DNA of 64,000 nucleotides from Lytechinus pictus (taxonomy: Eukaryota): NCBI RefSeq assembly GCF_037042905.1, contig NC_087256.1, positions 9,982,001 through 10,046,000 on the forward strand, read 5' to 3'. Position 1 is the stretch's first letter, and every line of letters starts with the position of its first letter. Under the pieces are notes generated by a model. That model had not been told where the DNA came from. It did not search any database and saw only the letters and a list, made by a program, of their open reading frames with translations. A program made the position numbers and the translations under genes. This document shows, piece by piece, positions 3,426 to 57,760 of this stretch.

Positions 3426-3664
3426 CTTCTTTTCTGCCTGTTGATGAGGAGTGGTGATTTGAGGACTTGCAACAGATGAGCTGCGAGGACGTTTGTTTTG
3501 GATAGGACTGGGCGTGTCCTGGGGGCGCTCCGTGCGCTTGAGGAAGGATGAGTTTCGCCTGGCTAGTACTGGTTGACTGGGAACCTTGAAGATGCCCTTC
3601 CTGCATCTGGGAGCACCAGAGGGCGTTGTTCGCAAAGTGTTGCAGTCTGCACCACGTTGCAGAG
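3426..3664 (-). CDS. cdc25: Cdc25 exon with 14-3-3-site region and bipartite NLS (RCRKGIFKVPSQP...LKRTERPQDTPSPIQNKRPRS); last exon seen in the window
   Basis: Within ORF 3321..3677; ccttcctag| acceptor, AAG|gtgagg donor, 239 nt phase 1-0; strong match to CDC25B LKRLERPQDRDTPVQNKRRRS. The nine exons sum to 1200 nt without a stop. Confidence 0.93.
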
Positions 3665-4055
3665 CTAGGAAGGACAAAAATGTAATTTAGAAGAAGGGAT
3701 GTTGACTTATGATACTTGAATAGGTAGTCAACCTCGCAAGAAATTCATAAATGCAGTTAAGGTAGATTGTCAAAAGTCTGAGCCGCATCTCTGCCCGCAG
3801 GAAACCAACGCCTCTTTAAATTACCAATTCTCACATTTTATAATAGATGACAAAATTCAAAATGCAGGAAAGCTTCTATATATAGATGCATTTTTCCTTT
3901 TTGAAGGATTCTTGTTAAAAAACGCATAATACAGACCGTTAACAAAGTTCTTAAAGAGGGGCTGTCGAATGTAAAAAGGTCAATCGCAGTGTAGAGCAGG
4001 CAATAAACCCATGTACCATGGATTAATCTTGATGATGTTTGACAAAACAATTGAA

Positions 4056-37381: not shown

Positions 37382-39913
37382 ATATTTTGTATGGTCTTCA
37401 CTTCGATTTCATAAGTAACACAACATTATTCCTATAAGATTGAGAGAGAAAAGGAAAAAGATGTAACTTTTGATATAAAGAAGTGACTGTGCCAATTCCA
37501 GCACCTTTTATTAGGTTCGTGTTGATAATGGTCAGATGATTAGGGGATGATTATCTTCTACAGAATATAGTACAGAGCAAAATTCAAAATGTATCTCACA
37601 ATCAGTTTGATCATTAATATGATAATTCAATACCATGCAATTTATGTATCTGATATTACGATGATACAACATGTACAGAAATCAAGAAGGATGGAGCCTA
37701 TTCATTCTGCATTCGCAGATGTTTGTATACTTATTTAAGAGTACTTTAAAGATGAAATCGTAATATGACGAACATATAATTACACTAATGATATATAATT
37801 AGTTAACGAACAAAAACTTCAATTATTTCACAAAAGAAATCACTCAAGGAAAATATGGCATGAATTTGCAGAATAGAAGATTATGATAACAATGGTAATT
37901 AGGTCTCATTTCAATATGAAGCGTATATTATTTTCTAACTAAATATGGCAATATGATTAGGAGCGTCGCTTGGATATTCTTGTCTGTCGATGTTTCATCA
38001 AATGTGCTATATACACTGCTGCTGTAACAAAGAATGAATACGATGAAACATGAGAATACTGAACGTTGCAATAACAAAAGAGAACTGAAATGAGGTTAAG
38101 AACCCGGATGATTTCATATTTTCATCGGCATCCCACCTCACTTCTCAAATACAAACTAAGAAATACTGAATACACTGTTATTTTTCCGAGTCCCCTAAAC
38201 AAAATAAACCCTTTTGATTAAAATTATCATCACACGCCTTATAATAATTATCCGCATTTATAAACGACAGAAAATTTCAATATTTACATGCAACATACAC
38301 TAAATTTAAATATAGTTCATAGCATGAAATAATGATATCAACACCCAGTGACTGTAAAGATATTGAATGGCGCCAGCTAAAGGTCACATTTTGAAATGTC
38401 TGTGTTCCAAGATGAACTCTCAAATTCAATGTACGATGTTAGAAAATCATCGGTATGAAACTGAATGGAAGTGTCGGGTTGCCCGCCTAAGCTTGGATAT
38501 ACGGATACGGTGTGAGAGATTTTCTGATACTTTAAGTAATCCATTCATAACTTTCATTAAAATTCCATTGTATTTCTGCATTGTATTACTCAAAATTAAA
38601 CCTACAGGGGCACCTGACTTCGGGGGGGGGGGGGGGGGGGCTGGACACCGTGGTCTATTATAAGAGCACGTAGGTATAAAATGGTTGTTTTCACACCATC
38701 GGACGATGTACGCGCGTACAGTGAAAAGTTGCATGAGCAACCAAAATAATATAGTTTTTAACAGCCTTGTCTGGTCGCTTCAATCTTATTATCCCTATTA
38801 ATGACGCTCATTTGTTAAAATTGATATGTATGTGACCTGAACTCTCGGTCAGCAGTTCGTCCTTTGGTCACAGGCAAAATACTATACACCTAATGTTTTG
38901 CATCTGTGGTGAGTCTAACATTTATGTTGATGATTTGTCTTTGTTCTCACTCGATTAAGGATAGTTATGATTTAAGATCATAACGAAAATGTAATTGAGC
39001 TCAAATGGGTGGAAAAAAACATTAAAAATACTTGGATGGCAAATCACATTACGATCACAGAAAATATAACTTTCAGGAGAGACATTCAATTCAAACTCCA
39101 TCTAACGATCATTCAGGTAGGAAAATAAAGTTTTATATTTAGTTCTCTGCAATGTCTAAACGGTCCCATTTAAAAACCACCTGTAGTTTACATTTATACC
39201 GGCTGTAGTGAGTTACAGACGAATTTACACGTACACTGCATGACCTGTTGTTTACGTAGATTCAAATTCTTTTTTAAATCTTCTGACTGTAAAATTGTTA
39301 ATTGTAATCATTTAAGTAGGATATTAAGAAATTCTGTCACACTTTGTTGAAACTCTAAATGATAAATTGGGTTAACTGATTTAGTACAAGACATTACATT
39401 GCTTACGGAGAGTTTAATGAAACATACTCTCACTCTTTAAGATTAAGGGGCCGTCATCCCCTGACAGTTTATTACGTTCTCCTATTATAATAACCACTTC
39501 CGCGTTTTCCTGTTAAAATTATGTTCTCAGACTTTACAAAATATAAGCCATTATCAAACATTATCAGTAGGCCTACATACAATGACGATCATAGTTTGAC
39601 ACACGATAACATACATGATAAAATCAGTACTGACTCAGACAATAAGTTTGCTGTTGTATAAGCTGTACCCAATCATTCTTACCAGCGCATTGGATTCAGA
39701 TATGAGTACGAAAATACAACAATTATCAAATTCGGCGTATGAATCCCGTAATAACCTTTAGCTGACAGTGATAAATGCATATCCCTAACGAATGCGACAA
39801 AAAAATGGATAGGTCGGAAAAGATGATGTTATAAGAACTAAAGTAAATTACAAGGTCAGACAAAACTGTACACCGGGATAATTAGTTTTGAAAAGACACC
39901 ATTGCGTCCAAAA

Positions 39914-40162
39914 TCAATTTAATGACATCGACGTACAGGTCGGGTCAAGGTGACAGGCGCCCTCTGCGGCAGAACAGCAGATGCCATTTGCGACACACTG
40001 CCCTTCAAGGCCACAGGAAGGGGCATTGAGTTGACACGGGGACACATCTTCGGTCATACAAGCTGCAGCTTCGGGCGTGAACAGGTAACAGCCGAACTGT
40101 GGACTACAGCATGTACCCACCATTACGCATCTTCCCTGACTTCGTGGACCGCATGGTCTGCA
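39914..40162 (-). CDS. NGFFFamide: NGFFFamide precursor, last coding exon: neurophysin domain (CRPCGPRSQGRC...CHLDPTCTSMSLN*)
   Basis: Within ORF 39914..40297; acceptor ccttctgtgcag|TGC at 40163; TGA at 39914-39916; 82 aa with 14 Cys in neurophysin spacing (CxxCGP, TCC, GC, SPC, CG, ICC); phase 0 fits the 56204 donor across a ~16-kb intron. Confidence 0.95.
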   Translation of the reverse strand, partial: CRPCGPRSQGRCVMVGTCCSPQFGCYLFTPEAAACMTEDVSPCQLNAPSCGLEGQCVANGICCSAAEGACHLDPTCTSMSLN

Positions 40163-43100
40163 CTGCACAGAAGGAGACACAAAAAAGATTGGAGGAAAAA
40201 AAGGTAGAAAAATATGATTAATCCTTACTGTAAAAAAAACTCGAACATCAAAATGATTGCAATTTTCTGTTCTAAAGCATAATCCAAGCAATATCACCGT
40301 GATGCAGAGCGATGAATCAAGTCGGTAAATAAACTTGAAGTTGATAACGAATTTGATTAATTAAAATTGATACTATATTATCAGCAATGTTTGATCTGAA
40401 ATGAATCAAAATATCTTATTCAATAAATGTATGATAATAATGAAACATAAAACGATTTTATATCCTATAAAATATATAATATGAACAAATTAAAGATATG
40501 GGAGAAAATAAATGAGGACTGAGTAAAACAATGTTGAACTTAACAGATAAAAAAAAAACCGAAAGGGATTCCTTAAATACCTAAATGCCGAAATACAATT
40601 TTAAGTTATAGTCGAAAAGACGTGAAGTGTCTAGAAACTCTAAAATAACAACAACAAAAAAAGATAAACATGGAGGGGAAGAGCGGATAAAATAAAGTGG
40701 CAGGAGGAAGAATACCATATTTTATCCACCAAGATTATTCTACTGCATAAGATCATCTTGCTGTATACAAGTTCTCTATATATACCATGTATACCGTGTA
40801 ATCAGGGATTTGAGAGTAGATAGAGTAGTAGGTATTCTCTCAAAGGGAATCAATGCTTGGCCGATGTTATAAAAGTGTTGAATAACTGTGTTGAGGGGTT
40901 AGTACTCTTTTCGGCTTCTTGTCTACATTAAATCTACAACTGAGGTGAAGACGTCTATTTTCTTTCTGGTTGTCCAGTATGTACCAATATATAAGCTCTC
41001 TCTGTGCATCCGTTGCGGAATATAACACAAAATGCTTAAAAATCTACATGAAGGTCTACATATATCACAAAAAAAAATAAAACGGAACTAGAAAATTGCC
41101 ACCACATTAGCTGATTCACGATTTGGTATCTGTTGTGATGAAGCCAGTCATGCTCGTGATAGCGAAAGCGCACGTGTGGAAGATACCAATGAATACCTAT
41201 GTTGATGTGGCGTCATTCTTATAGAAATAGTTTTGATATCGGAATGCGTTATTTCCTGTTGGTTCGATAAAAGTCATGTTTACATCGCTCTCATATATCG
41301 GCAAGTTGGATAATTATTGAAACATCTACATCCGCTTTTTTGGACAGAAAATATAGGACGAGGGGTAATCAAACTTATAGGAATTATAGCTGTTCATGAA
41401 TATCAAGGGGTTCAAAGGGAAGAGTGAGAGAGAAGAGAGATATGATTGAAAAAGAAGAGAAGAAAACAAAAAAAGAAGAAAAGAAAAGAGAAAGAGAAAA
41501 GGGACAATTGATACAGTGGGTGGAGAGGGTGCGGAGAATAAGATATAGAAAAAAGTTATACGTAAAGAGAGAGAGAGGGGGATGTAAGAGAGAAAGGGGG
41601 AGTGTAGTACAAGACATATTCCCGCTATTATTGAAAGAGGCTGCGGAACCAGAGGGGGGGGGGGGTTCAACCCGATTCAGCCTCGCCCCCCTTTTTGTGC
41701 ATGGAAAAGTCCACCATTTTGCCTCTCTTCCCCACTTTCAAAACCGTTCCACGTCCCCTGTGTAGTCATAATGATATAATGCGAATCGATCCAATATTAT
41801 ACTTTTTATAACTATGAGTAAAACGGTACATAGATGGCATCATTCTGTGCATTCCAAATGCTAACCTGGGAATGGCATATACATCTCTGGTAGATCAGAC
41901 GCGGATATTATTTTCCAATGCGTGAATGACATTTCGACAATATTATTTTTTATCTGTATCTCAAAGGATCGCAATTGCAAATATGACCTGGGTTTCTCTA
42001 TCCACGTATAAATCATGAATCAATAAATCATTCTGCAACATTTATCATCGTTTAGTGATGCCGTGCGTGCCGAAAGTGAAGCAATCTCGTTCCATTGATG
42101 TTGGTATAACTGCTATGACGTTGCCAAAGACATTTAAAATAGATAGGACGTTGCCATCTTCCACAGAAACGTGTTATCGGCTTCAGGGCACGTGCTCCAT
42201 GAACCTCGTGCTACAGCCACATCGGCGAAACTGCTCCAGACCGATCAAAGCCATTACATATCACATACCTTTGCTCGATTTCGAGTCGGTTTGTGGTATG
42301 ACTGTAGCATTGTTTTAAATGGTTTATCATTGGTAAGTTTTAAACTCGGTTATGGTGGTGTGATTATGGTATTAGGGCCTACATGAACGTGTTGATAATT
42401 TGCTATTTTGGAAGACTATGGCATCTCAAACTGGAGATTTTTTTATTATTCTTACATCCGACCACCCTCCCCTCCGTCAGACGCGATGAATAATATAGCA
42501 AAGTGAATCAATAAATCAATGCACATGACACCTGCAGTGTTGGGTGACGTTGATAGTGACACATGCAACATTAATAAACTAAATGATTTAATGAACCGTG
42601 GAGTGAAATTAAGTGCGATAGAAGTATTAACAAAAGACTATCGACCTGATTCGACGGAATGATCGGAAAATAAAATAGTTAAACTAACATTTAATTTGAA
42701 AATGTAAACTTGAAATGATCTCTTGATTCTGTATACCATTGCTGATTCAATTGATGAAGAGCTTCTATTATAGTCCTGATCTTTTTTTGTAATATAATTG
42801 CAACAATCCGTCATTTCGTCAGTTCACGTCGTTGGGGATATGAAAAGTGTGTGATTATGCAGAGCATTAAGTTTTGTAATGGGATTTCTAAGCATATAAG
42901 CACCATGGACCAAAAGATTAAGAACTGAGAATTTTGAAGTAATTTCAGAAAGTGTAAACTCGTTCAGGTGGAAAAGATGTTGAAGGAGGACACGGAGGAT
43001 GATCGTGATGATGATGGGGATGTTTGTGATGATGGTTATGACAANNNNNNNNNNNNNNNNNNNNNNNNNNNNNNNNNNNNNNNNNNNNNNNNNNNNNNNN

Positions 43101-46100
43101 NNNNNNNNNNNNNNNNNNNNNNNNNNNNNNNNNNNNNNNNNNNNNNNNNNNNNNNNNNNNNNNNNNNNNNNNNNNNNNNTGACGGTGGTATATAGTGGTA
43201 GCGGTTTTATTTGTATCATACCACTACCAATATATAAATATATATACATGATAAAGAATGAAATAAGAATGGAATAACAATTTAAAAATGGGACTATTGG
43301 GCTTTCGTTTTTTAATCATGTATTTCACGTATTCGAAAAAATTAAAATAAGTTCCATATTCTGATTAAATGTCCGTTTATATATATATAGGTTATATCAT
43401 GGAGCTATTGTAATAGCTCTATGGTTATATTATTCACAGTCCTGCAGTCCAATACTACCAATAAAAAAGGATTCCGCCAACCATATAGCATTAAATCACA
43501 GCAGACAGGTTTATTAGGGAGCGAATTACATTGACAGTGTATACGGTGCAGTGGCGGATTGATTTGTCTCTTGATAGCAACTCTCTTGGCTTAAAGGATG
43601 CTCCCATCAATCAAACCAATGTGACAATTGAATACACCCACGCTATATACGCAACCCTCGGTATTCATAAGTCGACAATCAGAAAGCAATTTCAACTAAA
43701 ATTGATCCATCATTCTCTTCCCAAGCTATCTCACTTATCTCCGATCGTTTACATCTAATTCTCCGTTACTGAGAAATGATACAATAGAAATTTACTCTAT
43801 ACTCTCATGAATATTGGATGAAAGGTATATTTCCAGGGGTTTTATATTACAAAAATGAAAGATAAGTAAGACTAGAATTGCAATCGTATCAAAACGATAT
43901 GCATGCATTTGTTTTGGGTTGAATTTTTTTTTATATTAAGAAGTTTTGACGCATTGAAGTATAGATGCATGTGATCGATTAAATAGGGGGCAAGAAACAA
44001 AGCCAGACTAAAAAAGAGAAAACTCTATACTGTAGAGGATGATTCATATGCAGTAACTTCCATGACAATTATGTGAAATTAGGTTTCCGCTAGGAGCCGA
44101 TTTCTGCCATAGACATTTTGTATAATTATGTTGCTGATAAACTATGCATTGTATAGTATGCCACGTGATCAAATCGGATTATCTCAAAATTTAATGTTAT
44201 AACTTATATCGTATTTGGTGTCAATGTAAAGTAAATTCCAATGCAGCGACATTGCTACCAGCTTTATTTGTGCGCAAGCAACAAACCGGAAGTAAATGGA
44301 ATATAAAGTAATGAATAAAAAAATGAAGGGTTTTCGCGATAATTTTAAGCTGACGTCAGCTCTTTGTCAGTTCCTGTCAAAAAGGTCGAAGAACAGTTGT
44401 GGTATACATCAATCCTGATATCTGCCAAGTTGGAAAGGTTTCGCTCGAATGATAAAGAAGTGCGAGCGAGTTGAAGTTCTTCTTGACATTATTGTGCATT
44501 TTTTCGTATTTTGAGATTTTCAGGAGCACTTTTGATATATATTTTGTCAGTTGTAAAGTATATATTTTTGCTAATGCCTTCAAAGAGCATAACTTGAAGA
44601 ACTCAAATCCAAGAGAGGGTACGGGTTTGACCTTGCATGACGCAATGAGGGTCAATCGAAGATAAACATTTTCAAAACATTAGAGGGTGCTATTTCTAAA
44701 AGTAATAGTCATTGATGCTTGAATTATGACAGATGATACCATAATGCAATCTCTGAAAATATGAGACCAAAATGAATGAAAACACAGAATTATGGCCATT
44801 ACACGATTTTATGACTTTGCATTTCAATAAATACGAAGTTTTTGAAGGTAAACTATTTCGGATATGAATTAAGGGCATGAAAATGGCATTTCGAAGGGCA
44901 TGTTATGTATCGCAGATAAAAGAGCAACTCTTAAACAATCTACAACAATTTGTTAGAAGTCTGTACCATGCAGGATAAGGGAGATTCGATAGAATTAGGA
45001 ATGGTATGAAAATGGGTCTGAAATGGACAAAATGGTGCATGGATGGTCACGCATGAACGATTTTGGATAACGGAATGTAAGGTGTACAATTAGGGGTTCT
45101 GGACAATATTCCTACCAAATTTGGAAGAATTTGGAGGAGGAACAAGGCCAGAGCAGGAGCCACAATCTCTATGTATTAACTGAATGGGATTTTGGCGGAA
45201 GAAAAAAAGAAGATTGCGGAATCGGAATGGAGAACAGGAAGAAGACATTGTCGCCATTTGGCGTCAATGCAAAAAGATGAGAACAAAATAAAGAAGACGA
45301 TGTATTGGAAATAAATGCCGACATATGAACATTTCTAGCATGGGGAAATGAGTAAAAAAAGATCAGGAAAGAAAAAGGGTTTAAATATAATATTATTTTA
45401 TAAATATAATCCATCACAACTCAGGTTTACTGTTTTCGTTTTTTTTTTTCTCCCGACTTTTGAGCAATTTTGTTCCATAAATCACGTTTGTCCCCCTCAA
45501 ATTTGTACGGATCAATACGCCACTGGACTGCACAAAACATTGGGTGAAATAAAATAAAAATCGAATTCTTTTATTGATTTTATTTACTATGATTATTAAT
45601 CTTCTTCATACATTATTGATATTATCATCATCATTTTAATTATATTATGATAATAAGTATATCGTAATCGCTATCATCATCCCCATTATTGTCGTTTTAA
45701 AATACTTCTTATACTTTATCAGCTCTTACCGTGCCCATGATTGTTTTGGAGTTTGGTTTCAAATTTCATTTGATATGGTAAATTAGATTTTTGTTTATTA
45801 ATTAAATTGTAATGAAAACTTTACAACATCTTGCAATTCATTACATGTGAAGCTTCCAATGTCGAGGTTTCATACAAAAATATCAAAGTTGATACTATAT
45901 CTCATCTAGCATAGATAAAACGCAGCCCTAATTACTTCTGCGCAAGTGGCTGCTTCGAATACCATTCTTTTGGTTGTAAAGCAAGCTTTCTTAAACCGAT
46001 GACCTCAAATACTTAGCATTGTTATACCATCGAGGATATATCTCATATCATCTCTAACTTGCCATGAAATCATTTTTAATAATGTACATTTCCCTGCAAA

Positions 46101-47599
46101 TAATTACATTCGACCATTGAAATAGCTATCCTTGGTAACCGTTGCCATGGTAACTTGGCTTTTATCGGTTCTGTTGAGCTTTTCATTCTCTTCTTAGTCA
46201 CATGCGTTCATAATAGTATTCATGAAGAAGAAATCGTTGAAAAAAATACTCGTTCATGACAATATGGAGTATAGTAAGCATAGCGAAGGATCAATGGGAT
46301 AAATACTCGTCAATATTCGAATGGTCGGATGACACACTGCCCTTCTTTCAGATGATATTTGGTCTTTGGCTGAACTGAATGAAAACAAATAATGTAATTA
46401 TATTCATTTAATTTTAAGTGGCGCATGAAAGGTAAGTTAAAACATGAATACGTGTTTAGTATATAATAAATCAAATTATTGTTCATCGTTCTTGCATTCC
46501 TATTTCAAAGAAAGTTTGATAGCTACAGATACACCACTTTTCGTTGATTTATTCTTTGTGAAAATCTAAATTTTTCATAAAAGTCCCTAAAACAACGTAG
46601 CCTATTCAAAACCTCTCTTATACGAAGAATGCATCCTGAATTTTCTATCCCATCTCAGGTTTATATTAAGTGGTTTTATATCCCTCCTCCCTAAACAAAC
46701 AAATTAAATGAGTAAAAGAGATTAGGATCGACTTTATCAAAATAATCTTGGCAGTTCGATTCAACTTTGATTAAGGTCATATTCGGAAAATAGGTTTTAA
46801 TAAGAAAACAGGTTATATAAATAAGAAACCTAATAAGAAATAAACAAACTATATAGTATTTTCATTAGATTAAATGTGTTTTACAATGATATGATTACAT
46901 GATGTATGTGTATATCAGTGATAAAAATTTTGAAATTAAATGGAAAAAAGGTTATCCAAAACACCGCGAGCAATACCACGCAAAATGTCATGGGGGATCA
47001 AACTCAGGGAATTTCCGGGGTTCTTTCGGCGTCGGCTGCATACAGTGTGCTGCTGCTGATGATGTTTGATTTAATTAAAGTCTTTTCCTGCCCTTTCGTG
47101 ATATTGACGACGGATGTTTCGCCCAAATATCATCATTGAACTCTGTTGATGAAAATAACACTTGGGAGTTAAGGTAACCAAGGGCAACGTGGCCCGTGAA
47201 AACACTCCGAAATGAAGGGATGTGTGGCCTTCGGGATACGAATGATATCTGATTTAGTCTTTTAGACTCCTCAACTCCCTCTCTCATTTTCTTCTCCCAT
47301 TTCCCCTCTCATCTACTCTTTATTCAGTCTTTTACATCCCATCTGTGATAATAACTTCCAACGCGCTTCCAACAGGGCCCTTTCAAATTAACATCTATGA
47401 AAATCCGATATTCTGTCACCCTATTATTTTCGTCTCCATTAATGTTTTTTGCGAATGATTACCATAAATGGTAACACCTGAACATTTCTTTCCCAACCAT
47501 TTTCACTTTAACACGATGTCTTACTACTGTCCAAAAATCAAATATAAAAGAATGAAAAACAGAAAGTGCGGAGTGAACGGATATAATTCTGTTTCTGTT

Positions 47600-47845
47600 T
47601 ATGGTAACTCCCGTAGGAACTCGGCAGGACAGCGTTTTGCTGGTTAACGCCAAGCTGGTATATAACCAATTACCTAGGAATCATTTTACGTCTACGTTAA
47701 TCAGTCATAGTGGCTGGCCTTATAGACGACAGATATTACTCTCGGGCCTTTTTATCAAAGGGGAGACAATGGCAGAGTAGGGATTCAAACTCACAACCTT
47801 TGCGATTATGAGTCCAATGCTCTAACCACTAGACCACACGACCCG
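47600..47845 (-). mobile_element. tRNA-derived SINE
   Basis: Minus-strand GGGTCGTGTGGTCTAGTGGTTAGAGCATTGGACTCATAATC...GAGTTTGAATCCC followed by a non-tRNA body. Confidence 0.7.
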
Positions 47846-50602
47846 TATATAGTAACGAGATGATCATAAAAATGGTGTCAGTTAGATACCACAATGTACA
47901 TTTTTACAAAATCAACAGTCTGCTTATTTCGGCACATATCCGTATCCCAATACATTGTTAGTACCACCCCCTCCCCCACCTCCGGGAGAAGGTTCTAACA
48001 GGTTTGTCAGACAAGTTGGGTGTCAAGCCTGAAATGGGACTCCGCACAAGAACGATTTGCGAAAGCTATAAAAGAAAGAAAAAAGGCTCCCAAGAGGCAA
48101 AATACAACTTTAGAAATTTTTCCGAATGTGGGTGTACAGGTTGGAAGCATACGTGGTAAACTTTTGTGCGGTATGTGACAAAGTTCGTACAAACCCTTTT
48201 TTTAATTCTGTCGAACTAAAGAGAAATAAACGGAGATTTGAAATTGTGAAAAGTGAAGTATAAGATTCTTGATTTTTATCGTTCAAAATACAACAGTTAA
48301 AATCTGTATTAAATAGCAACTCATTTAAATGCCTCAATCAGTCAATATTAGGTCCACAAGATTAAAATTTTCTTTTAAAGGGCCTAAACTGTAAGTATGA
48401 TAAGGCACTATTAATACGGTTCAAGCAGATAGCGAGATTCGCAAGGCAGGTTTGATGGTCCTTGCGCCACTTCAAGATTGTCATACTACTTTTCTGTCGT
48501 GGCCGCACCAACGGAACCGTCCCATATAGACCAACCTAATACAATTATTACCAATGATATACCATCAATCAGATTGGAATAGATTCTTTCGGTGTGACTG
48601 GACTTTGGAGACTAATCACGACGCTCTCATATATATAAACCTAGCAAACAGATACAATATTGATGAATAGAGTACTTCGTAAATTAGGTTCTCTGCATAA
48701 TAACAGAGTAGAGAGTCGTGACAATGAAAAAAGAGCTCCCATTGAATACCAGGAGTACTTCGGGATGCTTGTCACTGATTAATAACTAGGTATATGTGTG
48801 ATGAAATTTATAAATGGGATAACGCCACGATTAAGTGTAGTTTTATCATGCTTTGGTGTAATTTTCTGCTTCAATGCGAAGTAGTCCCAATTGGATGTGT
48901 ATATAGGCTTGGCTTGATCGCACCAAGAAGTGCATTGACCGAGTTCCGTAGTAATTTGAGCGGGTACGGAATTACATCATAATCATAATTCCGTTTTAAA
49001 TAATTTGACATTACTCTCGCTTGAGCGGGGCAATTATTCGGATTGGATCGGCGTGTAAGTTGTCAATTAGTCGAAGCGCAAAGCGCCATGAAAGGACAAA
49101 TATCAGGGAAACCACACCAAAATACATGTGAATAAATTGAAAAATGAATAAAGAGAGGCACTATCACTGATATTATATTTTCTATAATTATTAAAAGTAA
49201 AAATCTGACGATCATCAGAGATATGCCGGATTCAAACGATTATGCTAGTACAGGGGAGGGTTGTCGAGTGTAAGTGGTGAAGAATCGAATTACTTTTTTT
49301 GTTAAAAAACGTTTAATTTACTTTTCGAGTTCTTGTAGACATCGAGCATTCATTAATCCATTTTGGAAACTTCGCGCTTCAAAAAAAAAAAAAAACTCAA
49401 ATCCCGTATGATAATACAACTAGGAACGTTTACATTTATCTTTTTAGATATGTTGACACCACTTCAAAATCACAAAACTACCTCTTTAAGGGAAGTAAAA
49501 AATGACATTTTATATTTCCGAAGTTATAACAGATCATCGTTTCCAAATATTGGTTCAAAATTTCACAACTTAAATACTTATAATTATGATACTTCCATAA
49601 TACCATTAACAGACCTGAGCCAACACGCAGCAATGTGGCATGGTTCAGTCAGATAAAATGATCTTCATTATTATTGTTCGGTCTTATATTGCTCTCTTGT
49701 ATTCGATCCAAGGCGCTGTTTAGTGTGATTTGGGCACGGAGCCGGTTTTAAGCTTTCCAATGTTTTATCCCTAATAGCCATTGATTGGTTTCTGCCATAG
49801 ATTAAAGGGGAGTATCTTGTTCTGATTTCTGATCGCGTGTACATCTAGGTCACAGGGAGTCTGTATCAACAGAATTGGTATAAATCACAACTGCTAATGC
49901 AATAACCTCCACACTTCTTTGAAACAAAACTGGTGCAATTAATTGGGCGCGGTGCGACCAGCGATATTGGGGTTAATTGCTCCTAAACAACCTGCTCTCT
50001 CAAACCAATATGGATTTTCAATGCAAAACCTTTGTGTTAATCCAGCACCAGCCGCCTGGTAGCCTGGTATGTGACCCCAGAGAAGTATTAAAGTAATAGA
50101 GGTTTGGGCTCAGTAACACCAAAAAGGTGTTTAGACAACACTGGTCGGTGTTAAAAGAACGTCAGTTTGAGTCTTAACAGGTTTCGTAATTAGGGAGTTT
50201 CGCTTCTACGACACAAGAAGTCTTTGACGAAAATTGATAAATCAAAACAGAAGTTTTGTCCTGAACTCTGGGCAAACGACATATTTCCACTTTTTCGACA
50301 ACTCTGAAACTTAGGACGAAACTTCTGTTCCTGTTTACAAATTTTCGACAAAGACCTCGAAGTTTTTTTGGTCATATGACTTGTGGGCATTTTCAATCTA
50401 TTTACTGTGTTCTTGCCTCCGTCCCCGTTGCGAAACTCTCTGTTATGTTGAATTGAAAATGGAGCTTATGCAGTGTAATGGCCGGGATAAATTCCTTTTT
50501 TATGGAAACGATTTAAAAATCATGTGTCTCGATTTTTTTTTTCTTCAAGTTTTTAGTTTCGTATGATATTTATGAAAAATGAAACTAAATATAATCATAC
50601 AT

Positions 50603-52380
50603 CTTCTTCTTGTCAGGTCACTACACAAGACCTGTCCAGTGGAGGGTACAGGATCTGGCTTTGGGGTTAAAGGACTCCAGATCTTCGGCAGTGCACGGCT
50701 CTGGTAGGAGGGGGCAGACCAGAAGGTGTTGCATCGTCTGATCCTCCCCACACTCGCAAGCAGTGTCCCCATCTATGTTGTAGCCCCATTTCTGCATAAG
50801 GACTTTGCACCGTCCTGTCCCAGACCGTAGGCGATTACGACATAGCCAGGTTGGCCATTGAACCCGGGGGAGTGACTCGCTAGGTCCATAGGAAAGCTTG
50901 TGCGTCACAGACTGGAGGTGGTGGGACCATAAGTTGACCCTTTGATTGTGAGCAGAGCCATCGAGGGGTTCAGTCGAGTGAAGGAAACTACGTCTTGATT
51001 TGAGTATCTTTTTGGCGGGTTCATGGTTGTAGAGTGGATGAAGAGGATTATCTTCTTGTTTAGTTTTTTTCAACCTGTGCTGCAACCTCTCTTCTGATGT
51101 TATGTTGTTATACCGAGGTTGTTATGTTATACCGAGGTTGTTTTACCTGACTGCTAAGAAAGCACGAATGCCTGTGAGCAAGCAACCAGGGGACCAACGG
51201 CTTAAGGTCCTCTCCGAGGGACCTGGTAATGAGGATAAATGCCTTACCAAAGGGCACTAGCGCACCACTTGGGAATCGAACCCGGGTCACCGGAATCCGA
51301 AACCCCCGCTCTACCGACTGAGCTATGCCACACAGTAGGTAAAGATCATCTACTCTTGTTGGTCGCAGGCAGCCAGTAATTGCTCTGCAGGTAGCATTCA
51401 GGGCTGGATCAAATTTTGCAGCATGGGATGACCTACACCAGACAGGAGCTGCATACTCTTCAGTTGAGTAGCATAGAGCAAGAGCTGTTGTACGGATGGT
51501 TTTGGCATCTGTTCCCCATTTCGTATTGCCAAGCTTTTTCAGGATGCTGTTCCTTGCTCCAACTTTAGCCTTTGTCTTGGCAACATATTCTTTGTATGTT
51601 AGGGAACGGTCAAGGGTGAGACCGAGGTAGATAGGCTTGCTGGTGTGTGCCAACCATTTTTCATACCATCTGACCCTCAGTCTCCGGTCTGCATCTCTGT
51701 TCTTAAGGTGGAAAGCACTGAGTTGGGTTTTCTCTGGATTTGCCCGGAGATGATTTGCTGCATAGTAAGGGGTCAGGCCTGCCAGTGCATCACTGAGTGC
51801 TTTTTCCACCTCTTCAAAGGACTGCTTCTGCAATGTAATGCAAAGGTCATCAGCGTACAGGTAGCTCTTAATAATTGGGTGGATTTTTTGGTCGTTCGTG
51901 TAAATGTTGAAGAGGAGTGGGGCGAGGACGCTTCCTTGTGGGAGACCATTTTTCTGCCTCCACCATCTGCTGCTGGACCACCAAGATTCACAAAAAACGT
52001 CAGTGTGAGAGCATGTTCTGGATCAGCTGTGTCAGCTTAAAGACTTTCCTCGTGAGTATCAGATGATTTACCGTGTCATAAGCTGCAGAGAGGTCAACAA
52101 AGGCTGCTCCAGTTATCAGCCCTTTCTAAAAACCATCTTCGATGTACTGTGTCAGATTCAGCAGTTGACTAGTACAGGACTTTCCTGGCCTAAATCCTGC
52201 TTGTTCTGGAATAAGAAGCTCATCCACAAAGGGAGCAATGCGATTGAGAAGGAGCCTGTCAAAGAGCTTGTATGTGTGACAGAGCAGCGATATGGGTCTG
52301 TAGCTTTTTTGGCTGGCTGTGTCTTTGCCTGGTTTAAGTAAAGCGACTACCCTTGATTTTCTCCATATTTTTGGCATACA
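50603..52380 (-). mobile_element. 5'-truncated, frameshifted non-LTR retrotransposon (Ingi/Vingi-like RT)
   Basis: YRPISLL, QAGFRPGKS, GLPQGSVLAPLLFNIY, YADD, YLGLTLD, WGTDAKTIRTTALALCYS, C-terminal CECG...HLLVC, (AAG)n tail; ORFs 52126..52377, 51108..51833, 50621..51085. Confidence 0.9.
51098..51325 (-). mobile_element. tRNA-derived SINE inserted in the Vingi-like LINE
   Basis: TAGCTCAGTCGGTAGAGC A box, GGTTCGATTCCC B box, tandem AACAACCTCGGTAT tail; splits LLCGIA|..IRRE. Confidence 0.85.
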
Positions 52381-52549
52381 TTAGCGCTAATCTTTGTGTA
52401 AAATTACAGAATCTATTTAAATTGACCATAATAAAAAAAATCAATATGTATCAGTTTGGAGACATGTCCTACTCCCATGCATGATTACATGGATTCTATC
52501 TAAACATCATACGAAAATCGATGTGGTTACCACTGGATAATTTATCTAG

Positions 52550-53850
52550 GCCACAGCAATGTAAAGTCAGCATGGTTTCAGAAAATAACATTCCTGCGAA
52601 ACACAGCTCATACAAACCATGCATGACCTCTCTATTTCTTTTGACAAACGGACTCAGACTGACATAATAATAACCGCCTTTTCTAAGGCCTTCGACACTG
52701 TGCCCCATCAACGACTTCTCCTCAAACTCAAGCAATATGGTATCAATGGGAAGATTAATCAGTGGATCTCATCTTTTTTACAGAATAGATACCAGAGAGT
52801 AGTATTAGGGGGGGGGATATTCACAGTGGGTTAGGGTACAGTCAGGCGTCCCGCAGGGCACAGTGCTCGGATCATTATTGTTTATCATCTACGTGAACGA
52901 CCTACCAGACGGCTTGACCTCAACTGTACGACTATACGCGGACGATTGTATCATATACTCTAACATCAAATCCCAAAACGACGCTACTAGACTTCAGAAT
53001 GACCTGGACAAACTTTCTGCATGGGAAAATAAGTGGCAAATGAAAGTTAACCCAGAGAAATGTTTTGTTCTTAGGATAACTTCTTCTAGATCACCTTTCA
53101 CAACCAAATACAACTTGGGTGGCGTAGATCTACAGGAGACCACTCACCATTCATACCTTGGTGTCAATATCTCTCAAAATCTTAAATGGGACAAGCATAT
53201 TTCCAAAACCACAACTTCTGCAAATAAAGTCAACGGCTTTATTAACAGTAACTTGACATCATGCACAAAACAAACAAAAGCTACAGCTTACACAACTTTA
53301 GTCCGACCAATCTTAGAGTATAGTTCTAGTGTTTGGGACCCATATACAAAAGAACATATTCATGAAATTGGTAAGGTGCAAAGAAGGGCAGCCAGAATGG
53401 TATGTAATGACTATAGACAAACCACCAGTGCTACAAAACTAATGCAGGGGTTGGGATGGGATCTCCTTTCGAAAAGAAGGAAAGTTTCGAGGGTTGGTAT
53501 ACTGCACAAGGCCTGGGGGGGGGGGGCACTTGGCCCTGCCGGTGTCGGACTATCTACGTCCGGCAACTCGAGCTACCAGACGCACATCCGGAAAATCTTT
53601 CATCCACTGCTCTACTCGCACCAATTGCTTTAAAAACTCATATATTCCACGTACCATCAAGGACTGGAATTCTCTACCCCCCGACATCCAGTCAATCTCA
53701 GTCTCCGATAACTTCAGAACACATGCAACCATATACTTTCGCAACAAACACTTAAGCAAAAAGGACTAATAATAAACTAAGTGCGCACTCCCAATTCCTC
53801 CTCGGGTGGTTCCTGATAGGGACGTTGAGGAGTATACACAAGAAGAAGAA
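52550..53850 (+). mobile_element. 5'-truncated CR1/L2-group LINE (RT), frameshifted
   Basis: FSKAFDTVPH, SGVPQGTVLG, YADD, YLGV, VRPILEY, IPRTIKDWNSLP; frameshifts in G runs; (AAG)n tail. Confidence 0.9.
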
Positions 53851-55072
53851 AAGTACCTATCCTCTATAAAACCGTATTTCCATTTGTAATATTCCGGTGC
53901 CCACTAACCTGGCGGTGTGTTTGGTATGATTTCAAACCTCTAGACTGAGAGTAAACTTCATAAACCACTACACCCATCCAAACAAATATTACTGATAGAT
54001 GGCTTGTGACATATCATTACAAACCATCATATTTGAATGATCTTATGAATCTCAAGTAACTTCGAACAAGTTACCCATCTTTTAAGGTGAACTCTATAGA
54101 TTGTAGGTTTTATAGATATGTAAGTGGTTAAGTCTGCACATCATGTCACGTCATACATGCTTAAGTGCGGTATCTTAGATTAGCTAAAACATTTGACGGC
54201 AGCTAAAATCAGGCTGGCATTGTCTCATTCACATTCGTTGTATTTTACAATATGTCTAAAGCATTCACTTGATGAATTACATGCAAATGGGGCAAAGTGA
54301 CCAAATGTGTTTTTGTCGAAGCGAAATAAGGCCATGAGCTACAGTTATAAGCCCTAATGTACGGTGAAAGTGTGACATTATTACGGTTAAAAGACTTGCC
54401 GGTAGAGTTTTGTTTGTCGGCAAATTTGCATCATTTTTCATTGAGTAAATGGACGTGATGGGTGATGTGAATGGAAGGCAAAAGAAATCAGTCAATATAT
54501 TCTTATTCTTTAATTGAGAAGATGGCAAAATGGGATACGTAATAAATCTGATAACTTGGACTTTGGCTACGGACAGTTTTCTGAATGCGGTAAAGTTTAA
54601 AGATTCAGGCATTCCCACTTTTGTCACGAGATCACAAAATTACTCCGAATGTAACACAAGCTTTTCCGCAAAATTATACAGATAAATTTTATGACTTGAC
54701 TTTTTTGGTATCTAAATTGTGATGTTTCCAATTCGTAAATATCATTAGAGATTCTGGATTTTCTGGGCTAATAGACCAATGAATTCATGATTCACTTTTA
54801 AAATCTCATCCGGCACATTCATGTTTTGCCTGTGGCATTATGGATCCCCAGTAGGCAACTCAAGCTACATAAGCTTGAAATTAAATGAGACAACTGGGCT
54901 ATGACTTGACATGTTGAATTCTTAATCATAATTATGGATATTTAATAATGCATGAGGGATTTAAGGCCTGTTTCGTATGGTAGATGAAGATAAACTTGTT
55001 ATTGAAGGTAAGATTTGCAAGACTATCGGACCTACTATGAGATCAATATCTTTTCAAAGGGTAACTCTTTTT

Positions 55073-55864
55073 TTTACGGCAAACGTCACGTGTGTAGTCC
55101 TGAAAAGGACTGTTTGTTGTTTTTTCTTAATTGTATTTTAGCTCTGAAAAGAACCGTTAACGACGTTTCGACCAGCGCGTCCTGGGTCCCGTAACACAAA
55201 GGTTAGCGATTGATCGTACGCTTGATTTTCACTATTTTTTTTCACGATTTTCACGATTGTGCATTGTAGTCAATGCAATCAATCGTAGAAAATAGTTCTA
55301 CGATTATTGCTAAGCTTTGTGTTACGGGCCCCAGGGGACCGTTTCATAAAGCTGTTCTTAAGTTACGAATGTCTTTACGCACGACTGGTGACCCTTTCTT
55401 GTGCTATATGATATATCGCTATATAGCTGACTTATGTACACTCTTAAAAATGTTGGGCAACATACGGTCCACACAACAATTGGTTAAAACTTTATCCAAT
55501 TCTGGGTAGTTTTACACCAATACTGTGTAGTTTTCACCCAAAGCACACATTATTGGTGTAAAACTACCCAGAATTGGATAAAGTTTTAACCAATTGTTGT
55601 GTGGACCGTATGTTGCCCAACATTTTTAAGAGTGTATAAGAACATGTTCCAGTCGTTCTTAAAGTTGTGTGCAACTTTACGAACAGCTTTATGAAACACC
55701 ACCCAGGTCGTCATCAGGAATGATGATCCACTTGAAAACTCGGGTATACGACCAGAACACGCTGGTCGAAACGTCGTTAACAGTTCTTTGCAGAGCTTAC
55801 ATACAATCAAAAAGAATAACAAAGAGACCTTTTCAGGACTACATACATTGCGTTTACCGTAAAA
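55073..55864. mobile_element. Inverted pair of Penelope-like pLTR fragments with three nested MITEs (55185-55331, 55335-55703, 55439-55634)
   Basis: CGCTGGTCGAAACGTCGTTAAC..GTTCTTT..CCTTTTCAGGACTAC on both strands; MITEs show clear TIRs with CWG or TA flanks. Confidence 0.7.
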
Positions 55865-56203
55865 ACTTCCATTATTCTCTCCTCCATGGAAACCTTCAAA
55901 GATCATCTTAAGTAACGATGAAGCTGTTCAATTTGATTGCATTGTTATCAGCCATCTCCCACCAATTCAACATTGACAATGGTGCACAACTTATGTCATA
56001 CAATCCTGTAGATTCCGGTTCATTTTCCTGTTTAATCTTTGCCTGTGAAAGTTTAACTTGGGCTACCTATTTATCTCTGGGCAAATAGAGTTTACTTATT
56101 AAGCCTCATACTTCAAGAATGTCGGGATGGAAATAAAAAAATATTTAATCTAATATTATAAGGGAGATCATGTATTAGTCACAAAATATCCCTAATCACC
56201 CAC

Positions 56204-56644
56204 CTTATCAAACGATCCCGACGATTCGAATTTCGATAGTCTGTCATCATCAACTTTGGTCGCTGATACTTCGCTACCCGATCTCTTGCCGAAGAAAAAT
56301 CCATTCCGTTTTCCAAAGAAAAATCCGTTTCTCTTGTCCTCATCAATGGGTGTTTCCGCCTCGTAGTTTCCTAGAGGTGAGTTTGGTGAAGCGCCCTCTA
56401 ATATGAAGAGTTGATCAGCCGAGACGTCCGCAGGAAGCTGCGGCAGTGGTTCTTGTAGGCCGTAAGCGGTGATGTCTGTCCTGTCTCTGCTTCGTGATGA
56501 TGGGTTGTGTTTTCTAAGCACGTTTCTAAGATTACTAAGAAGCTCGTCTTTCCACTCTTCGTTGCTAATCTTCTCCTCTGACGGCCCCATCTGATTCTCC
56601 CGCCATTTTTGGATAAGCGGTGACGGTACTATATTCCTGAATTG
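56204..56644 (-). CDS. NGFFFamide: NGFFFamide precursor, second coding exon: acidic propeptide + KR-NGFFFG-KR-NGFFFG-KR + spacer
   Basis: Within ORF 56192..56701; acceptor ttctctcctcag|CAA at 56645; donor AAG|gtgggt at 56203; 441 nt = 147 codons, phase 0-0; peptides and cleavage sites at 56282-56335. Confidence 0.97.
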
Positions 56645-57001
56645 CTGAGGAGAGAACAAAGAAAGAACTGGTTCACCATCTTTCAGCCCAATATTTAGCA
56701 TTTCAGAAGTATTTTAACAAAAAGGACAGCAAATCAAGGATGAGCAAAATACTTTATATTTTGGTCATTAGGTTTATTCATAAGTCTTACGGATTCACCG
56801 ATTACCTGTCCTCGACACCGATGTTTACTCGTCGTATTCATAATTATATTATAAATCAATTAAATTCATGTGTATAAAAGTCCCCTTAGCCAATACGGAA
56901 AATTGCATATAATGGAAAGATCCGATCATGCATCATAATTAACTATTTGTGTCTAAGCTTTCTTTTGAAAGTAGATTTAAAAAAAGTGATATTCATGTTA
57001 C

Positions 57002-57109
57002 CTTTTGTTGCATAAAGTTGTTATCCCTGTCCCCATAGACTGTGACGAATGATGCTAAAACTATAGAAATTGACAATAAAGTCCTCAGTATTCGTCTCTC
57101 GTAACCCAT
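57002..57109 (-). CDS. NGFFFamide: NGFFFamide (NG peptide) precursor, first coding exon: signal peptide MGYERRILRTLLSISIVLASFVTVYG + DRDNNFMQQK
   Basis: ATG at 57109; 108 nt = 36 codons with a hydrophobic core; donor AAG|gtaaca at 57001; acceptor ...tttgtcctcag| at 57151 makes the whole exon 57002-57150, implying an upstream non-coding exon. Too short for the ORF track. Confidence 0.93.
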
Positions 57110-57760
57110 CTTACGGTTCGGTACCTTCTCCTCACGAATCGACCCGCGATCTGAGGACAAATAGGAAATGAGAATGCTGCTAAGTTATAATGAAAACTGA
57201 GCAGAATTAGGAAACAGCAATTTATGTTTGGTTAAGAATGAAAGCCAGATTGGTAAAAATCAATCTTAAAGAATTAGCATTTTGGATGAATATATATATA
57301 CGCCACAACATTCTTGATATAGCGTTGGCCATGTTTGTAAGAATGCTGTTTTGAATTCATCTTTTTCGTCCAAAAATGAACATAACTGGACAATGGCGTT
57401 GAACACATGAATATTTGTCTTAAGTAAAAGCCACAATTGTAAAATTAAATTGGCATTTTGATAATCGGATCGAACTAAATTTATTTCAGGTTAAGGTAGA
57501 TTTACATGCTGAACATAACTTCGTTCAACTGCTTTTGCTGTCCCTAGCCATGTCCCTATAGCATACTTAAGCGTACATTCTGGTTTTTGTGTGGGCGCGC
57601 GTATTTGTGGTTGTGTTTTACTCTTTATATAATTTTTCTAGTTTATGGACATTGTATAAGCGTCAGTTGAATAGAATTCAACAAAAATATGGCTTATCCT
57701 TTATTTGATCGATTCTCATTTCACTATTTCATATTCAAATGGTGGTATTTGAGTTTTGTC

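What the first reader, a model, noticed from the sequence alone, without database searches (positions are those of the whole stretch)
39914..57150. Neuropeptide precursor joining two NGFFFamide copies to a neurophysin domain (NG peptide system)
Seen: three phase-0 exons splice into a 265-aa secreted precursor with signal peptide, KR-NGFFFG-KR-NGFFFG-KR and a 14-Cys neurophysin; the ORF track shows only two unlinked pieces 16 kb apart. Established: neurophysins are classically the carriers in vasopressin/oxytocin precursors; NGFFFamide is known from S. purpuratus as an NG peptide of the neuropeptide-S/CCAP family. So this is not new to science but is the key biology here: a neurophysin attached to a linear peptide with no disulfide ring, whose role is still unclear.
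Basis: partly seen in the sequence, partly recalled or inferred. Interest (0 to 1): 0.85.

Follow-up and report, generated by a model that had tools for sequence, protein, structure and literature searches.

The report
Sea urchin NGFFFamide–neurophysin precursor gene
This is the Lytechinus pictus copy of an already described sea urchin neuropeptide gene, which makes two NGFFFamide peptides and a neurophysin, so the gene is ordinary; it also lies about 0.2 Mb from its vasopressin/oxytocin-type sister gene, a linkage I did not find in the papers searched.

Summary
On the minus strand, 57109-57002, 56644-56204 and 40162-39917 (stop 39916-39914) join through two phase-0 GT/AG introns of 357 nt and 16,041 nt. 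The product is 265 aa: a signal-peptide-like N-terminus, KR-NGFFFG-KR-NGFFFG-KR, and a 14-Cys neurophysin (Pfam Hormone_5, E 3.4e-16).

The product equals residues 21-285 of RefSeq XP_063963665.1 (Lytechinus pictus LOC129272917, "uncharacterized protein"), annotated on a contig of the same length as the window's. It is 89% identical to the S. purpuratus 266-aa precursor.

The assembly gap 43045-43179 lies inside intron 2 and does not touch the reading frame. Conserved blocks colinear with S. purpuratus flank it.

Read-level proof of the 56204/40162 junction was not obtained. Support is indirect: the RefSeq model, the same exon structure in five echinoderm species, dN/dS of about 0.07 on the neurophysin exon, and run contigs that hold exon 3 but not the adjoining intron.

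Three points go beyond the finding:
- The genome's only other neurophysin gene, the echinotocin (VP/OT-type) gene, lies 183 kb away. This linkage holds in four urchin species.
- Both genes share a phase-0 intron directly before the first neurophysin cysteine. An earlier scan note on this same stretch (s1-311782) had raised that point.
- Gene models predict isoforms without neurophysin.

The parts
60491..60574 (-). Upstream 5' exon used by RefSeq isoform X2. The 5' limit is approximate. It ends at 60491 with donor GT at 60490-60489 and carries in-frame ATGs at 60509 and 60506, which give the MMGNILY extension of the model.
   Evidence: tblastn of the P0001 N-terminus. The sequence was read. The block 60574-60485 is 74% identical to S. 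purpuratus upstream of its ATG exon.
59791..59932 (-). Alternative 5' exon used by RefSeq isoform X1. It encodes MVPRR...HSILS in frame with the next exon.
   Evidence: tblastn 47/47 identical. It has no match within the 3 kb of S. purpuratus sequence held upstream of that species' ATG exon, so its significance is unknown.
57002..57150 (-). First coding exon. Acceptor AG at 57152-57151, 5'UTR 57150-57110, ATG at 57109. It encodes 36 aa including the signal-peptide-like MGYERRILRTLLSISIVLASFVTVYG.
   Evidence: The start MGYERR/MAHERR is conserved in L. variegatus, S. purpuratus and Diadema.
56645..57001 (-). Intron 1: 357 nt, phase 0, GT...AG.
   Evidence: The position is conserved in four urchin species and in the starfish Patiria.
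56204..56644 (-). Coding exon 2 (147 aa): the spacer propeptide and both NG peptide copies.
   Evidence: Held at 1.00 of sampled words by contigs of runs from two studies of the same organism.
56312..56329 (-). NGFFFG copy 1 (KR before, KR after). The expected product is NGFFF-NH2.
   Evidence: Processing is inferred from the dibasic sites and the C-terminal Gly. The peptide was detected by mass spectrometry in S. purpuratus (PMC4422128).
56288..56305 (-). NGFFFG copy 2 (KR before, KR after).
40163..56203 (-). Intron 2: 16,041 nt, phase 0, GT...AG. It contains the assembly gap 43045-43179, reverse-transcriptase fragments, an inverted repeat and conserved non-coding blocks.
   Evidence: The intron sits directly before the first Cys codon of neurophysin in all five NG genes examined.
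47040..47260 (.). Strongly conserved non-coding block inside intron 2. A core of about 200 nt is about 95% identical to S. purpuratus, compared with 83-84% for the coding exons.
   Evidence: It is single-copy in the genome and has no Rfam match. Its substitutions show no third-position bias. I infer a regulatory element; this was not tested.
39914..40162 (-). Coding exon 3 (82 aa plus stop): the whole neurophysin domain, with the 14 Cys spanning 40162-39935.
   Evidence: Pfam Hormone_5 E 3.4e-16. PDB neurophysins E about 4e-13. dN/dS is 0.075 against S. purpuratus. AF2 pLDDT is 75-88.
39450..39913 (-). Probable 3'UTR, with AATAAA at 39473-39468.
   Evidence: Conservation with S. purpuratus runs to 39520. 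Run contigs hold up to 0.48 of the stretch 39650-40650, of which the exon makes up 0.51.
40157..40162 (-). Tandem acceptor CAG|TGCAG|ACC. Use of the second AG (exon start 40157) shifts the frame and gives a 200-aa product without neurophysin.
   Evidence: The same isoform is in RefSeq for L. variegatus (P0008) and S. purpuratus (P0013). The motif is conserved in four species. Usage was not measured here.

Best explanation
This is the single-copy Lytechinus pictus gene for the NGFFFamide precursor, an NG peptide precursor of the neuropeptide-S / NG peptide / CCAP family.

It is transcribed from the minus strand from one or two non-coding 5' exons. Three coding exons give a 265-aa preproprotein.

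Shown here: the exon structure, the identity to the RefSeq model, the neurophysin domain, and strong purifying selection.

Inferred from the sequence and from work on S. purpuratus:
- The N-terminal 26 residues act as a signal peptide.
- Prohormone convertases cut at the three KR sites.
- Carboxypeptidase and amidating enzyme turn each NGFFFG into NGFFF-NH2.
- The peptide acts on an NPS/CCAP-type G-protein-coupled receptor and contracts muscle.

The C-terminal neurophysin is a paralogue of the vasopressin/oxytocin carrier. It is the most constrained part of the precursor. It most likely serves folding, aggregation or sorting of the precursor into the regulated secretory pathway.

It probably does not clasp the peptide the way vasopressin is clasped. 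The NG peptides have no free N-terminus until they are cleaved, they lack the Cys1-Tyr2 head, and the loop that carries the hormone-binding glutamate is two residues shorter.
For: - Splice sites, frame and 265-aa product.
- 100% identity to residues 21-285 of XP_063963665.1, whose contig length of 32,129,000 equals that of the window's contig.
- 89% identity to the S. purpuratus 266-aa precursor and 67% to Diadema.
- The same three coding exons and intron phases in L. variegatus, S. purpuratus, Diadema, Patiria and Amphiura.
- Pfam Hormone_5 E 3.4e-16. All 14 Cys align to bovine neurophysin.
- dN/dS is 0.075 and 0.064 on the neurophysin exon, against 0.12-0.20 on exon 2.
- Run contigs of two studies hold all of exon 2. 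Run contigs of the same two studies hold at most 0.48 of a stretch that is 51% exon 3 and 49% intron; runs X15 and X17 are in both lists. This is what spliced RNA would give.
- NG-type neurophysins form one clade with support 95/89, apart from the echinoderm VP/OT-type clade.
- Cys7-Cys8 loop: CMTEDVSPC here, against CMRENEISTPC in echinotocin neurophysin and CQEENYLPSPC in bovine neurophysin.
- Literature for S. purpuratus: NGFFFamide was found by mass spectrometry and has an EC50 of 0.4 nM at the NPS/CCAP-type receptor (PMC4422128). The precursor is expressed in larval neurons (PMC6209648).
Against: - No read or cDNA from L. pictus was seen to cross the 56204/40162 junction.
- The runs that hold the exons are only guessed to be RNA.
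- RefSeq models in three species also predict isoforms without neurophysin, so the 265-aa form may not be the only product.
- The signal peptide was judged by eye, not with a dedicated predictor.
- The role assigned to neurophysin is inference. The glutamate matching bovine Glu-47 is kept in urchin NG-type neurophysins, so a hormone-like clasp is not excluded.
Confidence: 0.93

Rival explanations
1. The neurophysin exon at 40.1 kb belongs to a separate vasopressin/oxytocin-type gene. The NG peptide exons end without it, so the 265-aa product is an artefact of joining two genes.
For: - The exons are 16 kb apart.
- An older L. pictus model stopped at 186 aa after read-through of the exon 2 donor (P0010).
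- No junction reads were obtained.
Against: - No C-x4-C-x2-G peptide exon exists on either strand of the window.
- The genome's VP/OT-type gene is complete elsewhere, with its own three exons at C12:9814848-9838855.
- Exon 3 groups with NG-type, not VP/OT-type, neurophysins.
- The same join is modelled in L. variegatus, S. purpuratus, two Diadema species, Patiria and Amphiura.
- According to its source name, the Ophionotus NG peptide precursor with neurophysin comes from a transcript (PMC4422128).
Confidence: 0.02
2. The gene is real, but its main products lack neurophysin. These would arise from the acceptor 5 nt downstream (200 aa) or from read-through of the exon 2 donor (186 aa, ...DKVGD stop). 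The neurophysin-bearing form would then be a minor or tissue-specific isoform.
For: - RefSeq lists such isoforms for L. variegatus (200 aa), S. purpuratus (201 and 187 aa) and formerly L. pictus (186 aa).
- The tandem acceptor CAG|TGCAG is present in all four urchins.
- The premature stop would lie in the last exon, so by general knowledge the transcript should escape nonsense-mediated decay.
- Sea cucumber NG precursors lack neurophysin (PMC4422128).
Against: - The tandem AG is forced by the Cys-Arg codons TGC AGA, so its conservation needs no splicing function.
- dN/dS of about 0.07 on the neurophysin exon shows that it is translated and needed.
- The Logan contigs that encode the ...VGA ending start at an internal Met, as unspliced genomic DNA would.
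- Isoform usage was not measured.
Confidence: 0.1
3. The locus is a decaying or silent copy (pseudogene) of the NG peptide gene.
For: None beyond the lack of read-level data.
Against: - The frame is intact and the splice sites are canonical.
- There are zero non-synonymous changes against L. variegatus in exons 2 and 3, while pS is 0.05-0.10.
- Only one NG-type neurophysin match exists in the genome.
- Run contigs hold the exons but not the adjoining intron.
Confidence: 0.01

Closest known systems
Strongylocentrotus purpuratus NGFFFamide precursor (LOC752998, XP_030841418.1, 266 aa; Elphick & Rowe 2009 as cited in PMC4422128)
   Same: Two NGFFFG copies between KR sites, the same signal peptide start, a 14-Cys C-terminal neurophysin, 89% identity, three coding exons with two phase-0 introns at the same positions, and a long second intron (15.6 kb against 16.0 kb).
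   Different: One residue shorter, with scattered substitutions in the spacer. The L. pictus models add 5' exons carrying in-frame upstream ATGs.
Lytechinus variegatus LOC121425404 isoform X1 (XP_041477383.1, 265 aa)
   Same: Same length, one amino-acid difference (D27E), same exon structure.
   Different: Intron 2 is 18.2 kb. RefSeq lists a 200-aa isoform from the 5-nt-downstream acceptor.
Echinotocin (VP/OT-type) precursor of the same genome (G000:C12:9814848-9838855)
   Same: Signal peptide, then peptide, then dibasic site, then a 14-Cys neurophysin. There is a phase-0 intron directly before the first neurophysin Cys. It lies on the same chromosome, 183 kb away.
   Different: - One cyclic CFISNCPKG peptide directly after the signal peptide, instead of two linear NG peptides after a spacer of about 115 residues.
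- The neurophysin is split by a second, phase-1 intron.
- The Cys7-Cys8 loop is two residues longer.
- It has a C-terminal extension.
- It falls in a separate clade in the tree.
Starfish and brittle star NG peptide precursors (Patiria XP_038071263.1, Amphiura XP_072039361.1, Ophionotus NG peptide precursor)
   Same: Two NG peptides plus a C-terminal neurophysin, with the same three-exon structure and intron phases.
   Different: - The peptides are NGFFY or mixed.
- Overall identity is 36-38%.
- The residue matching bovine Glu-47 is not Glu (H, N or S).
- The intron before neurophysin is 0.5 kb in Patiria and 34.7 kb in Amphiura.
Vertebrate neuropeptide S and arthropod CCAP precursors
   Same: According to PMC4422128, they belong to the same peptide-receptor family.
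   Different: They have no neurophysin domain. CCAP keeps a disulfide ring. This was not compared at sequence level here.

Membership tests
NG peptide precursor (NPS/NG peptide/CCAP-type family) | N-terminal signal peptide | tested here: met
   MGYERRILRTLLSISIVLASFVTVYG has basic residues, then a hydrophobic core, with V at -3 and G at -1. It is conserved in four urchins. This was judged by eye; no dedicated predictor was available.
NG peptide precursor (NPS/NG peptide/CCAP-type family) | Two or more peptides with an Asn-Gly motif, each bounded by dibasic sites and ending in Gly for amidation | tested here: met
   KR-NGFFFG-KR-NGFFFG-KR at 56335-56282.
NG peptide precursor (NPS/NG peptide/CCAP-type family) | C-terminal neurophysin domain with 14 Cys (present in most deuterostome invertebrate members) | tested here: met
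   Pfam PF00184 at 60.3 bits against a cut-off of 27.2. All 14 Cys align to bovine neurophysin. It falls in the NG-type clade with support 95/89.
NG peptide precursor (NPS/NG peptide/CCAP-type family) | Orthology to the characterised S. purpuratus gene | tested here: met
   89% identity, the same exon/intron structure, and colinear conserved intron blocks.
NG peptide precursor (NPS/NG peptide/CCAP-type family) | One mRNA carries both the peptide exons and the neurophysin exon | tested here: inconclusive
   The RefSeq model joins them. Run contigs hold exon 2 and exon 3 but not the intron next to exon 3.
NG peptide precursor (NPS/NG peptide/CCAP-type family) | The mature amidated peptide exists and activates an NPS/CCAP-type receptor | not testable with these tools
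   Shown for S. purpuratus only (PMC4422128).
Vasopressin/oxytocin-type precursor | A single cyclic C-x4-C-x2-G peptide directly after the signal peptide | tested here: not met
   No such motif occurs in any frame of the window. The precursor has no Cys before residue 184.
Vasopressin/oxytocin-type precursor | Three exons, with a phase-0 intron before neurophysin Cys1 and a phase-1 intron inside the C-terminal part of neurophysin (PMC10532012) | tested here: not met
   The first intron is shared. The second is absent, and the whole neurophysin lies in one exon.

The most novel reading that the evidence does not exclude
The NG peptide gene and the vasopressin/oxytocin-type (echinotocin) gene are still chromosomal neighbours in sea urchins because they are the two daughters of an ancient tandem duplication.

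The gaps between them are 183 kb in L. pictus, 240 kb in L. variegatus, and about 207-220 kb in two Diadema species. They are the only two neurophysin genes in the L. pictus genome. Both keep a phase-0 intron directly before the first neurophysin cysteine.

If the linkage also holds in starfish, hemichordates or amphioxus, it would be positional evidence for the proposed common origin of the VP/OT and NPS/NG/CCAP systems. So far that origin is argued from receptors and domain content.

I found no mention of this linkage in the held literature.
Probability: 0.5. Interest if true: 0.55.

Novelty: already known. Interest (0 to 1): 0.33.

Why it matters
The gene gives L. pictus, now a genetically tractable urchin, a named NGFFFamide/neurophysin locus. 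RefSeq still calls it "uncharacterized".

The unresolved question is the one the field already asks: what does a neurophysin do next to linear peptides? This locus offers handles for it:
- a neurophysin exon under tighter constraint than the rest of the precursor;
- a shortened hormone-binding loop;
- predicted natural isoforms that drop the domain.

The conserved linkage to the echinotocin gene and the shared intron position add positional evidence on how the two peptide systems arose.

Tried and rejected
- **Read laying.** There are therefore no junction counts, no isoform ratios and no transcript ends.
- **The look-up of encoding contigs for the 265-aa product and for S. purpuratus echinotocin.** Neither is on record, so no transcript contig was found and the S. 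purpuratus linkage could not be tested.
- **Complex prediction, neurophysin domain against the 40-residue NG peptide region.** No answer. This is not evidence either way.
- **AF2 of the whole precursor.** Neurophysin folds confidently. The NG peptide region is disordered (pLDDT below 40), so the model says nothing about docking.
- **Patiria and A. rubens.** There is no second neurophysin gene within 10 kb. The 0.2-Mb scale could not be examined.
- **GPCR gene 8.5 kb from the Patiria NG gene.** Its nearest solved relatives are somatostatin, opioid and NPFF receptors, not NPS or vasopressin receptors, so I dropped it.
- **Rfam on the conserved intron block.** Nothing.
- **Coding reading of the conserved intron block.** Rejected, because the substitutions are not concentrated at third positions and S. 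purpuratus has a 7-nt deletion just after the block.
- **Literature search for Glu-47 of neurophysin.** It gave only a cited title (Yuasa et al. 1993, in the reference list of PMC3932059). The structural paper is not held. The residue's role is therefore taken from that title and from my own knowledge.
Full report
**1. Observation.**
The ATG at 57109 opens a 36-codon exon ending AAG|GTAACA at 57002. A 357-nt intron ends CCTCAG| before 56644. Exon 2 (147 codons) ends AAG|GTGGGT at 56204. After 16,041 nt the acceptor GTGCAG| precedes TGC at 40162, and the frame closes at the stop 39916-39914.

Both introns are phase 0. The product is 265 aa with 14 Cys, all in exon 3, and holds KR-NGFFFG-KR-NGFFFG-KR at residues 140-157. 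The mechanical ORF list shows only the two unlinked pieces.

**2. The gap.**
The Ns at 43045-43179 lie inside intron 2, far from either splice site, so they cannot affect the frame. Blocks conserved with the S. purpuratus intron lie in the same order on both sides, at 43818-43456 and 41316-41270. This argues against a misjoin.

**3. Identity.**
- Exon 3 matches Pfam Hormone_5 (neurophysin) at E 3.4e-16, 60 bits against a cut-off of 27.
- It matches solved bovine neurophysins at E about 4e-13, with every Cys aligned.
- The spliced product is identical to residues 21-285 of XP_063963665.1, Lytechinus pictus LOC129272917 isoform X2, named only "uncharacterized protein".
- That model's contig length of 32,129,000 equals the length of the window's contig, so the window is from that assembly.
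- Orthologues: L. variegatus (265 aa, one substitution), S. purpuratus (266 aa, 89% identical), and Diadema antillarum and D. setosum (256 aa, 67%). More distant relatives are the brittle star and starfish NG peptide precursors.

The S. purpuratus protein is the published NGFFFamide precursor. The peptide was detected there by mass spectrometry. It activates an NPS/CCAP-type receptor with an EC50 of 0.4 nM (PMC4422128), and the gene is expressed in larval neurons (PMC6209648).

**4. Is the 16-kb join real?**
I could not lay reads. The indirect evidence is consistent:
- The same three coding exons and phases occur in L. variegatus, S. purpuratus, Diadema, Patiria and Amphiura. The intron always falls directly before the first neurophysin Cys codon.
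- The neurophysin exon is under strong purifying selection. dN/dS is 0.075 for L. pictus against S. purpuratus and 0.064 for S. purpuratus against Diadema. That is tighter than exon 2 at 0.12-0.20.
- Contigs of runs from two studies of the same organism hold all sampled words of exon 2.
- Contigs of runs from the same two studies hold at most 0.48 of a 1001-nt stretch that is 51% exon 3 plus 3'UTR and 49% intron. Runs X15 and X17 appear in both lists. Spliced RNA would give this pattern; genomic DNA would not.
- No VP/OT-type peptide exon exists in the window.

**5. Gene limits.**
RefSeq's two isoforms differ only in 5' exons, one ending at 60491 and one at 59932-59791. Both join the acceptor at 57150. 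Each carries an in-frame upstream ATG, which explains the 285- and 326-aa models. The start conserved across species is MGYERR. The 60.5-kb exon has a 74% match upstream of the S. purpuratus gene. An AATAAA lies at 39473-39468, 440 nt after the stop.

**6. Predicted isoforms without neurophysin.**
The acceptor is a tandem CAG|TGCAG. Using the second AG (exon start 40157) shifts the frame and ends after 200 aa. RefSeq lists exactly this for L. variegatus and S. purpuratus. It also lists a read-through form ending three codons into intron 2. The tandem AG is conserved in four urchins, but the Cys-Arg codons TGC AGA force it. Usage is unmeasured, so I treat this as an open point and not a finding.

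**7. How neurophysin might work here.**
This part is inference. In VP/OT precursors the hormone sits directly after the signal peptide, so its free amino group can pair with Glu-47 of neurophysin. That role is taken from the title of Yuasa et al. 1993, cited in PMC3932059, and from my own knowledge.

In this precursor the NG peptides are internal and gain a free N-terminus only after KR cleavage. The loop between Cys7 and Cys8 is CMTEDVSPC. It is two residues shorter than CMRENEISTPC in the echinotocin neurophysin and CQEENYLPSPC in bovine neurophysin.

The glutamate is kept in urchin NG-type neurophysins. It is H, N or S in brittle stars and the starfish, whereas it is present in 21 of the 22 VP/OT-type sequences I tabulated (listing).

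The domain is clearly needed, given its dN/dS. I favour a role in folding, aggregation or sorting over classical one-to-one hormone clasping. The field regards this as unresolved (PMC4422128, PMC5818035). A predicted-complex job gave no answer. An AF2 model left the peptide region disordered. Neither counts as evidence.

**8. Beyond the finding: linkage to the sister gene.**
Pfam Hormone_5 hits the 812-Mb genome only twice, both on contig C12. The second hit is the echinotocin gene:
- exon 1 at 9814848-9814985, encoding MMPIK...CFISNCPKGGKR...RQ|;
- exon 2 from 9836420, starting CLECGP;
- exon 3 at 9838691-9838855.

Its 3' end is 183 kb from the 3' end of the NG gene, and the two genes converge. 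A random pair of genes would lie this close with a chance of about 5e-4.

The linkage holds in other urchins:

| Species | Gap | Orientation |
|---|---|---|
| L. pictus | 183 kb | convergent |
| L. variegatus | 240 kb | convergent |
| D. antillarum (both haplotigs) | about 220 kb | same direction |
| D. setosum | 207 kb | same direction |

A neurophysin tree puts the six NG-type domains in one clade (95/89), apart from the echinoderm VP/OT-type clade (91/97). The duplication is therefore older than the echinoderm classes.

Both paralogues share the phase-0 intron before neurophysin Cys1. This agrees with an earlier scan note on the same stretch (s1-311782) and with the VP/OT gene structure described in PMC10532012.

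I could not test S. purpuratus, starfish, hemichordates or amphioxus at the 0.2-Mb scale. The held literature does not mention the linkage.

**9. Intron 2 content.**
The intron holds:
- reverse-transcriptase fragments on both strands at about 52.1-53.6 kb;
- nested inverted repeats spanning 55071-55865;
- six blocks colinear with the S. purpuratus intron.

The strongest block, around 47040-47260, is about 95% identical over about 200 nt, against 83-84% for the coding exons. It is single-copy, has no Rfam match and does not look coding. I read it as a candidate regulatory element.

**10. Verdict.**
The gene is a known kind and is already modelled, though unnamed, in RefSeq. Its interest as a discovery is modest. 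The conserved linkage with the echinotocin gene is the one item that may be new.

Noticed in passing
G000:C12:9814848-9838855 (loci L016, L014, L015), 183 kb from window 39914: This is the genome's only other neurophysin gene, the echinotocin (CFISNCPKG) VP/OT-type precursor. It lies on the same contig and converges with the NG gene. The linkage of about 0.2 Mb also holds in L. variegatus, D. antillarum and D. setosum, with a different relative orientation in Diadema.
   Followed up: partly
window 47040-47260 (also 54521-54267, 49889-49719, 49173-48778, 43818-43456, 41316-41270): These are colinear conserved non-coding blocks in intron 2 against S. purpuratus. The 47-kb block has a core of about 200 nt at about 95% identity, higher than the coding exons. 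It is single-copy, has no Rfam family and does not look coding.
   Followed up: partly
window 40157-40164 and 56192-56203: A tandem acceptor (second AG 5 nt downstream) and read-through of the exon 2 donor would each give a precursor without neurophysin (200 and 186 aa). RefSeq lists such isoforms in L. variegatus, S. purpuratus and an older L. pictus annotation. Usage is unknown.
   Followed up: partly
window 60491-60574 and 59791-59932: Two alternative 5' exons join the acceptor at 57150. Each has an in-frame upstream ATG, which lengthens the RefSeq proteins to 285 and 326 aa ahead of the conserved MGYERR start.
   Followed up: partly
window 52129-53630 (ORFs 52129-52377 minus; 52619-52831 and 52863-53630 plus): These are reverse-transcriptase (Pfam RVT_1) fragments on both strands inside intron 2, that is, decayed retroelement insertions. 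Neighbouring long ORFs at 50624-51833 gave no Pfam match.
   Followed up: partly
window 55071-55865: Nested inverted repeats lie 340 nt downstream of the exon 2 donor. The arms are 97 nt at 97% complementarity with 6 nt between them, plus outer arms of 55-65 nt. Together they could form a foldback of about 800 nt.
   Followed up: no
window 3324-3677 (-): This ORF matches Pfam M-inducer_phosp (cdc25-type phosphatase, E 1.9e-7). A cdc25-like gene therefore lies on the side of the NG gene that faces the echinotocin gene. An earlier scan note (s1-311783) raised possible ancient linkage. I did not test that.
   Followed up: partly
L011 and L012 (L. variegatus CM031026.1:12792110-12826527 and 12286191-12314699): Two genes 0.5 Mb apart encode the identical 165-aa echinotocin precursor in L. 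variegatus. This is either a real duplication or an assembly duplicate.
   Followed up: no
window 56192-56200: The read-through codons are GTG GGT GAT TAG (VGD) here. An older L. pictus model, L. variegatus and S. purpuratus all read VGA, which is a single-base difference in the intron.
   Followed up: no
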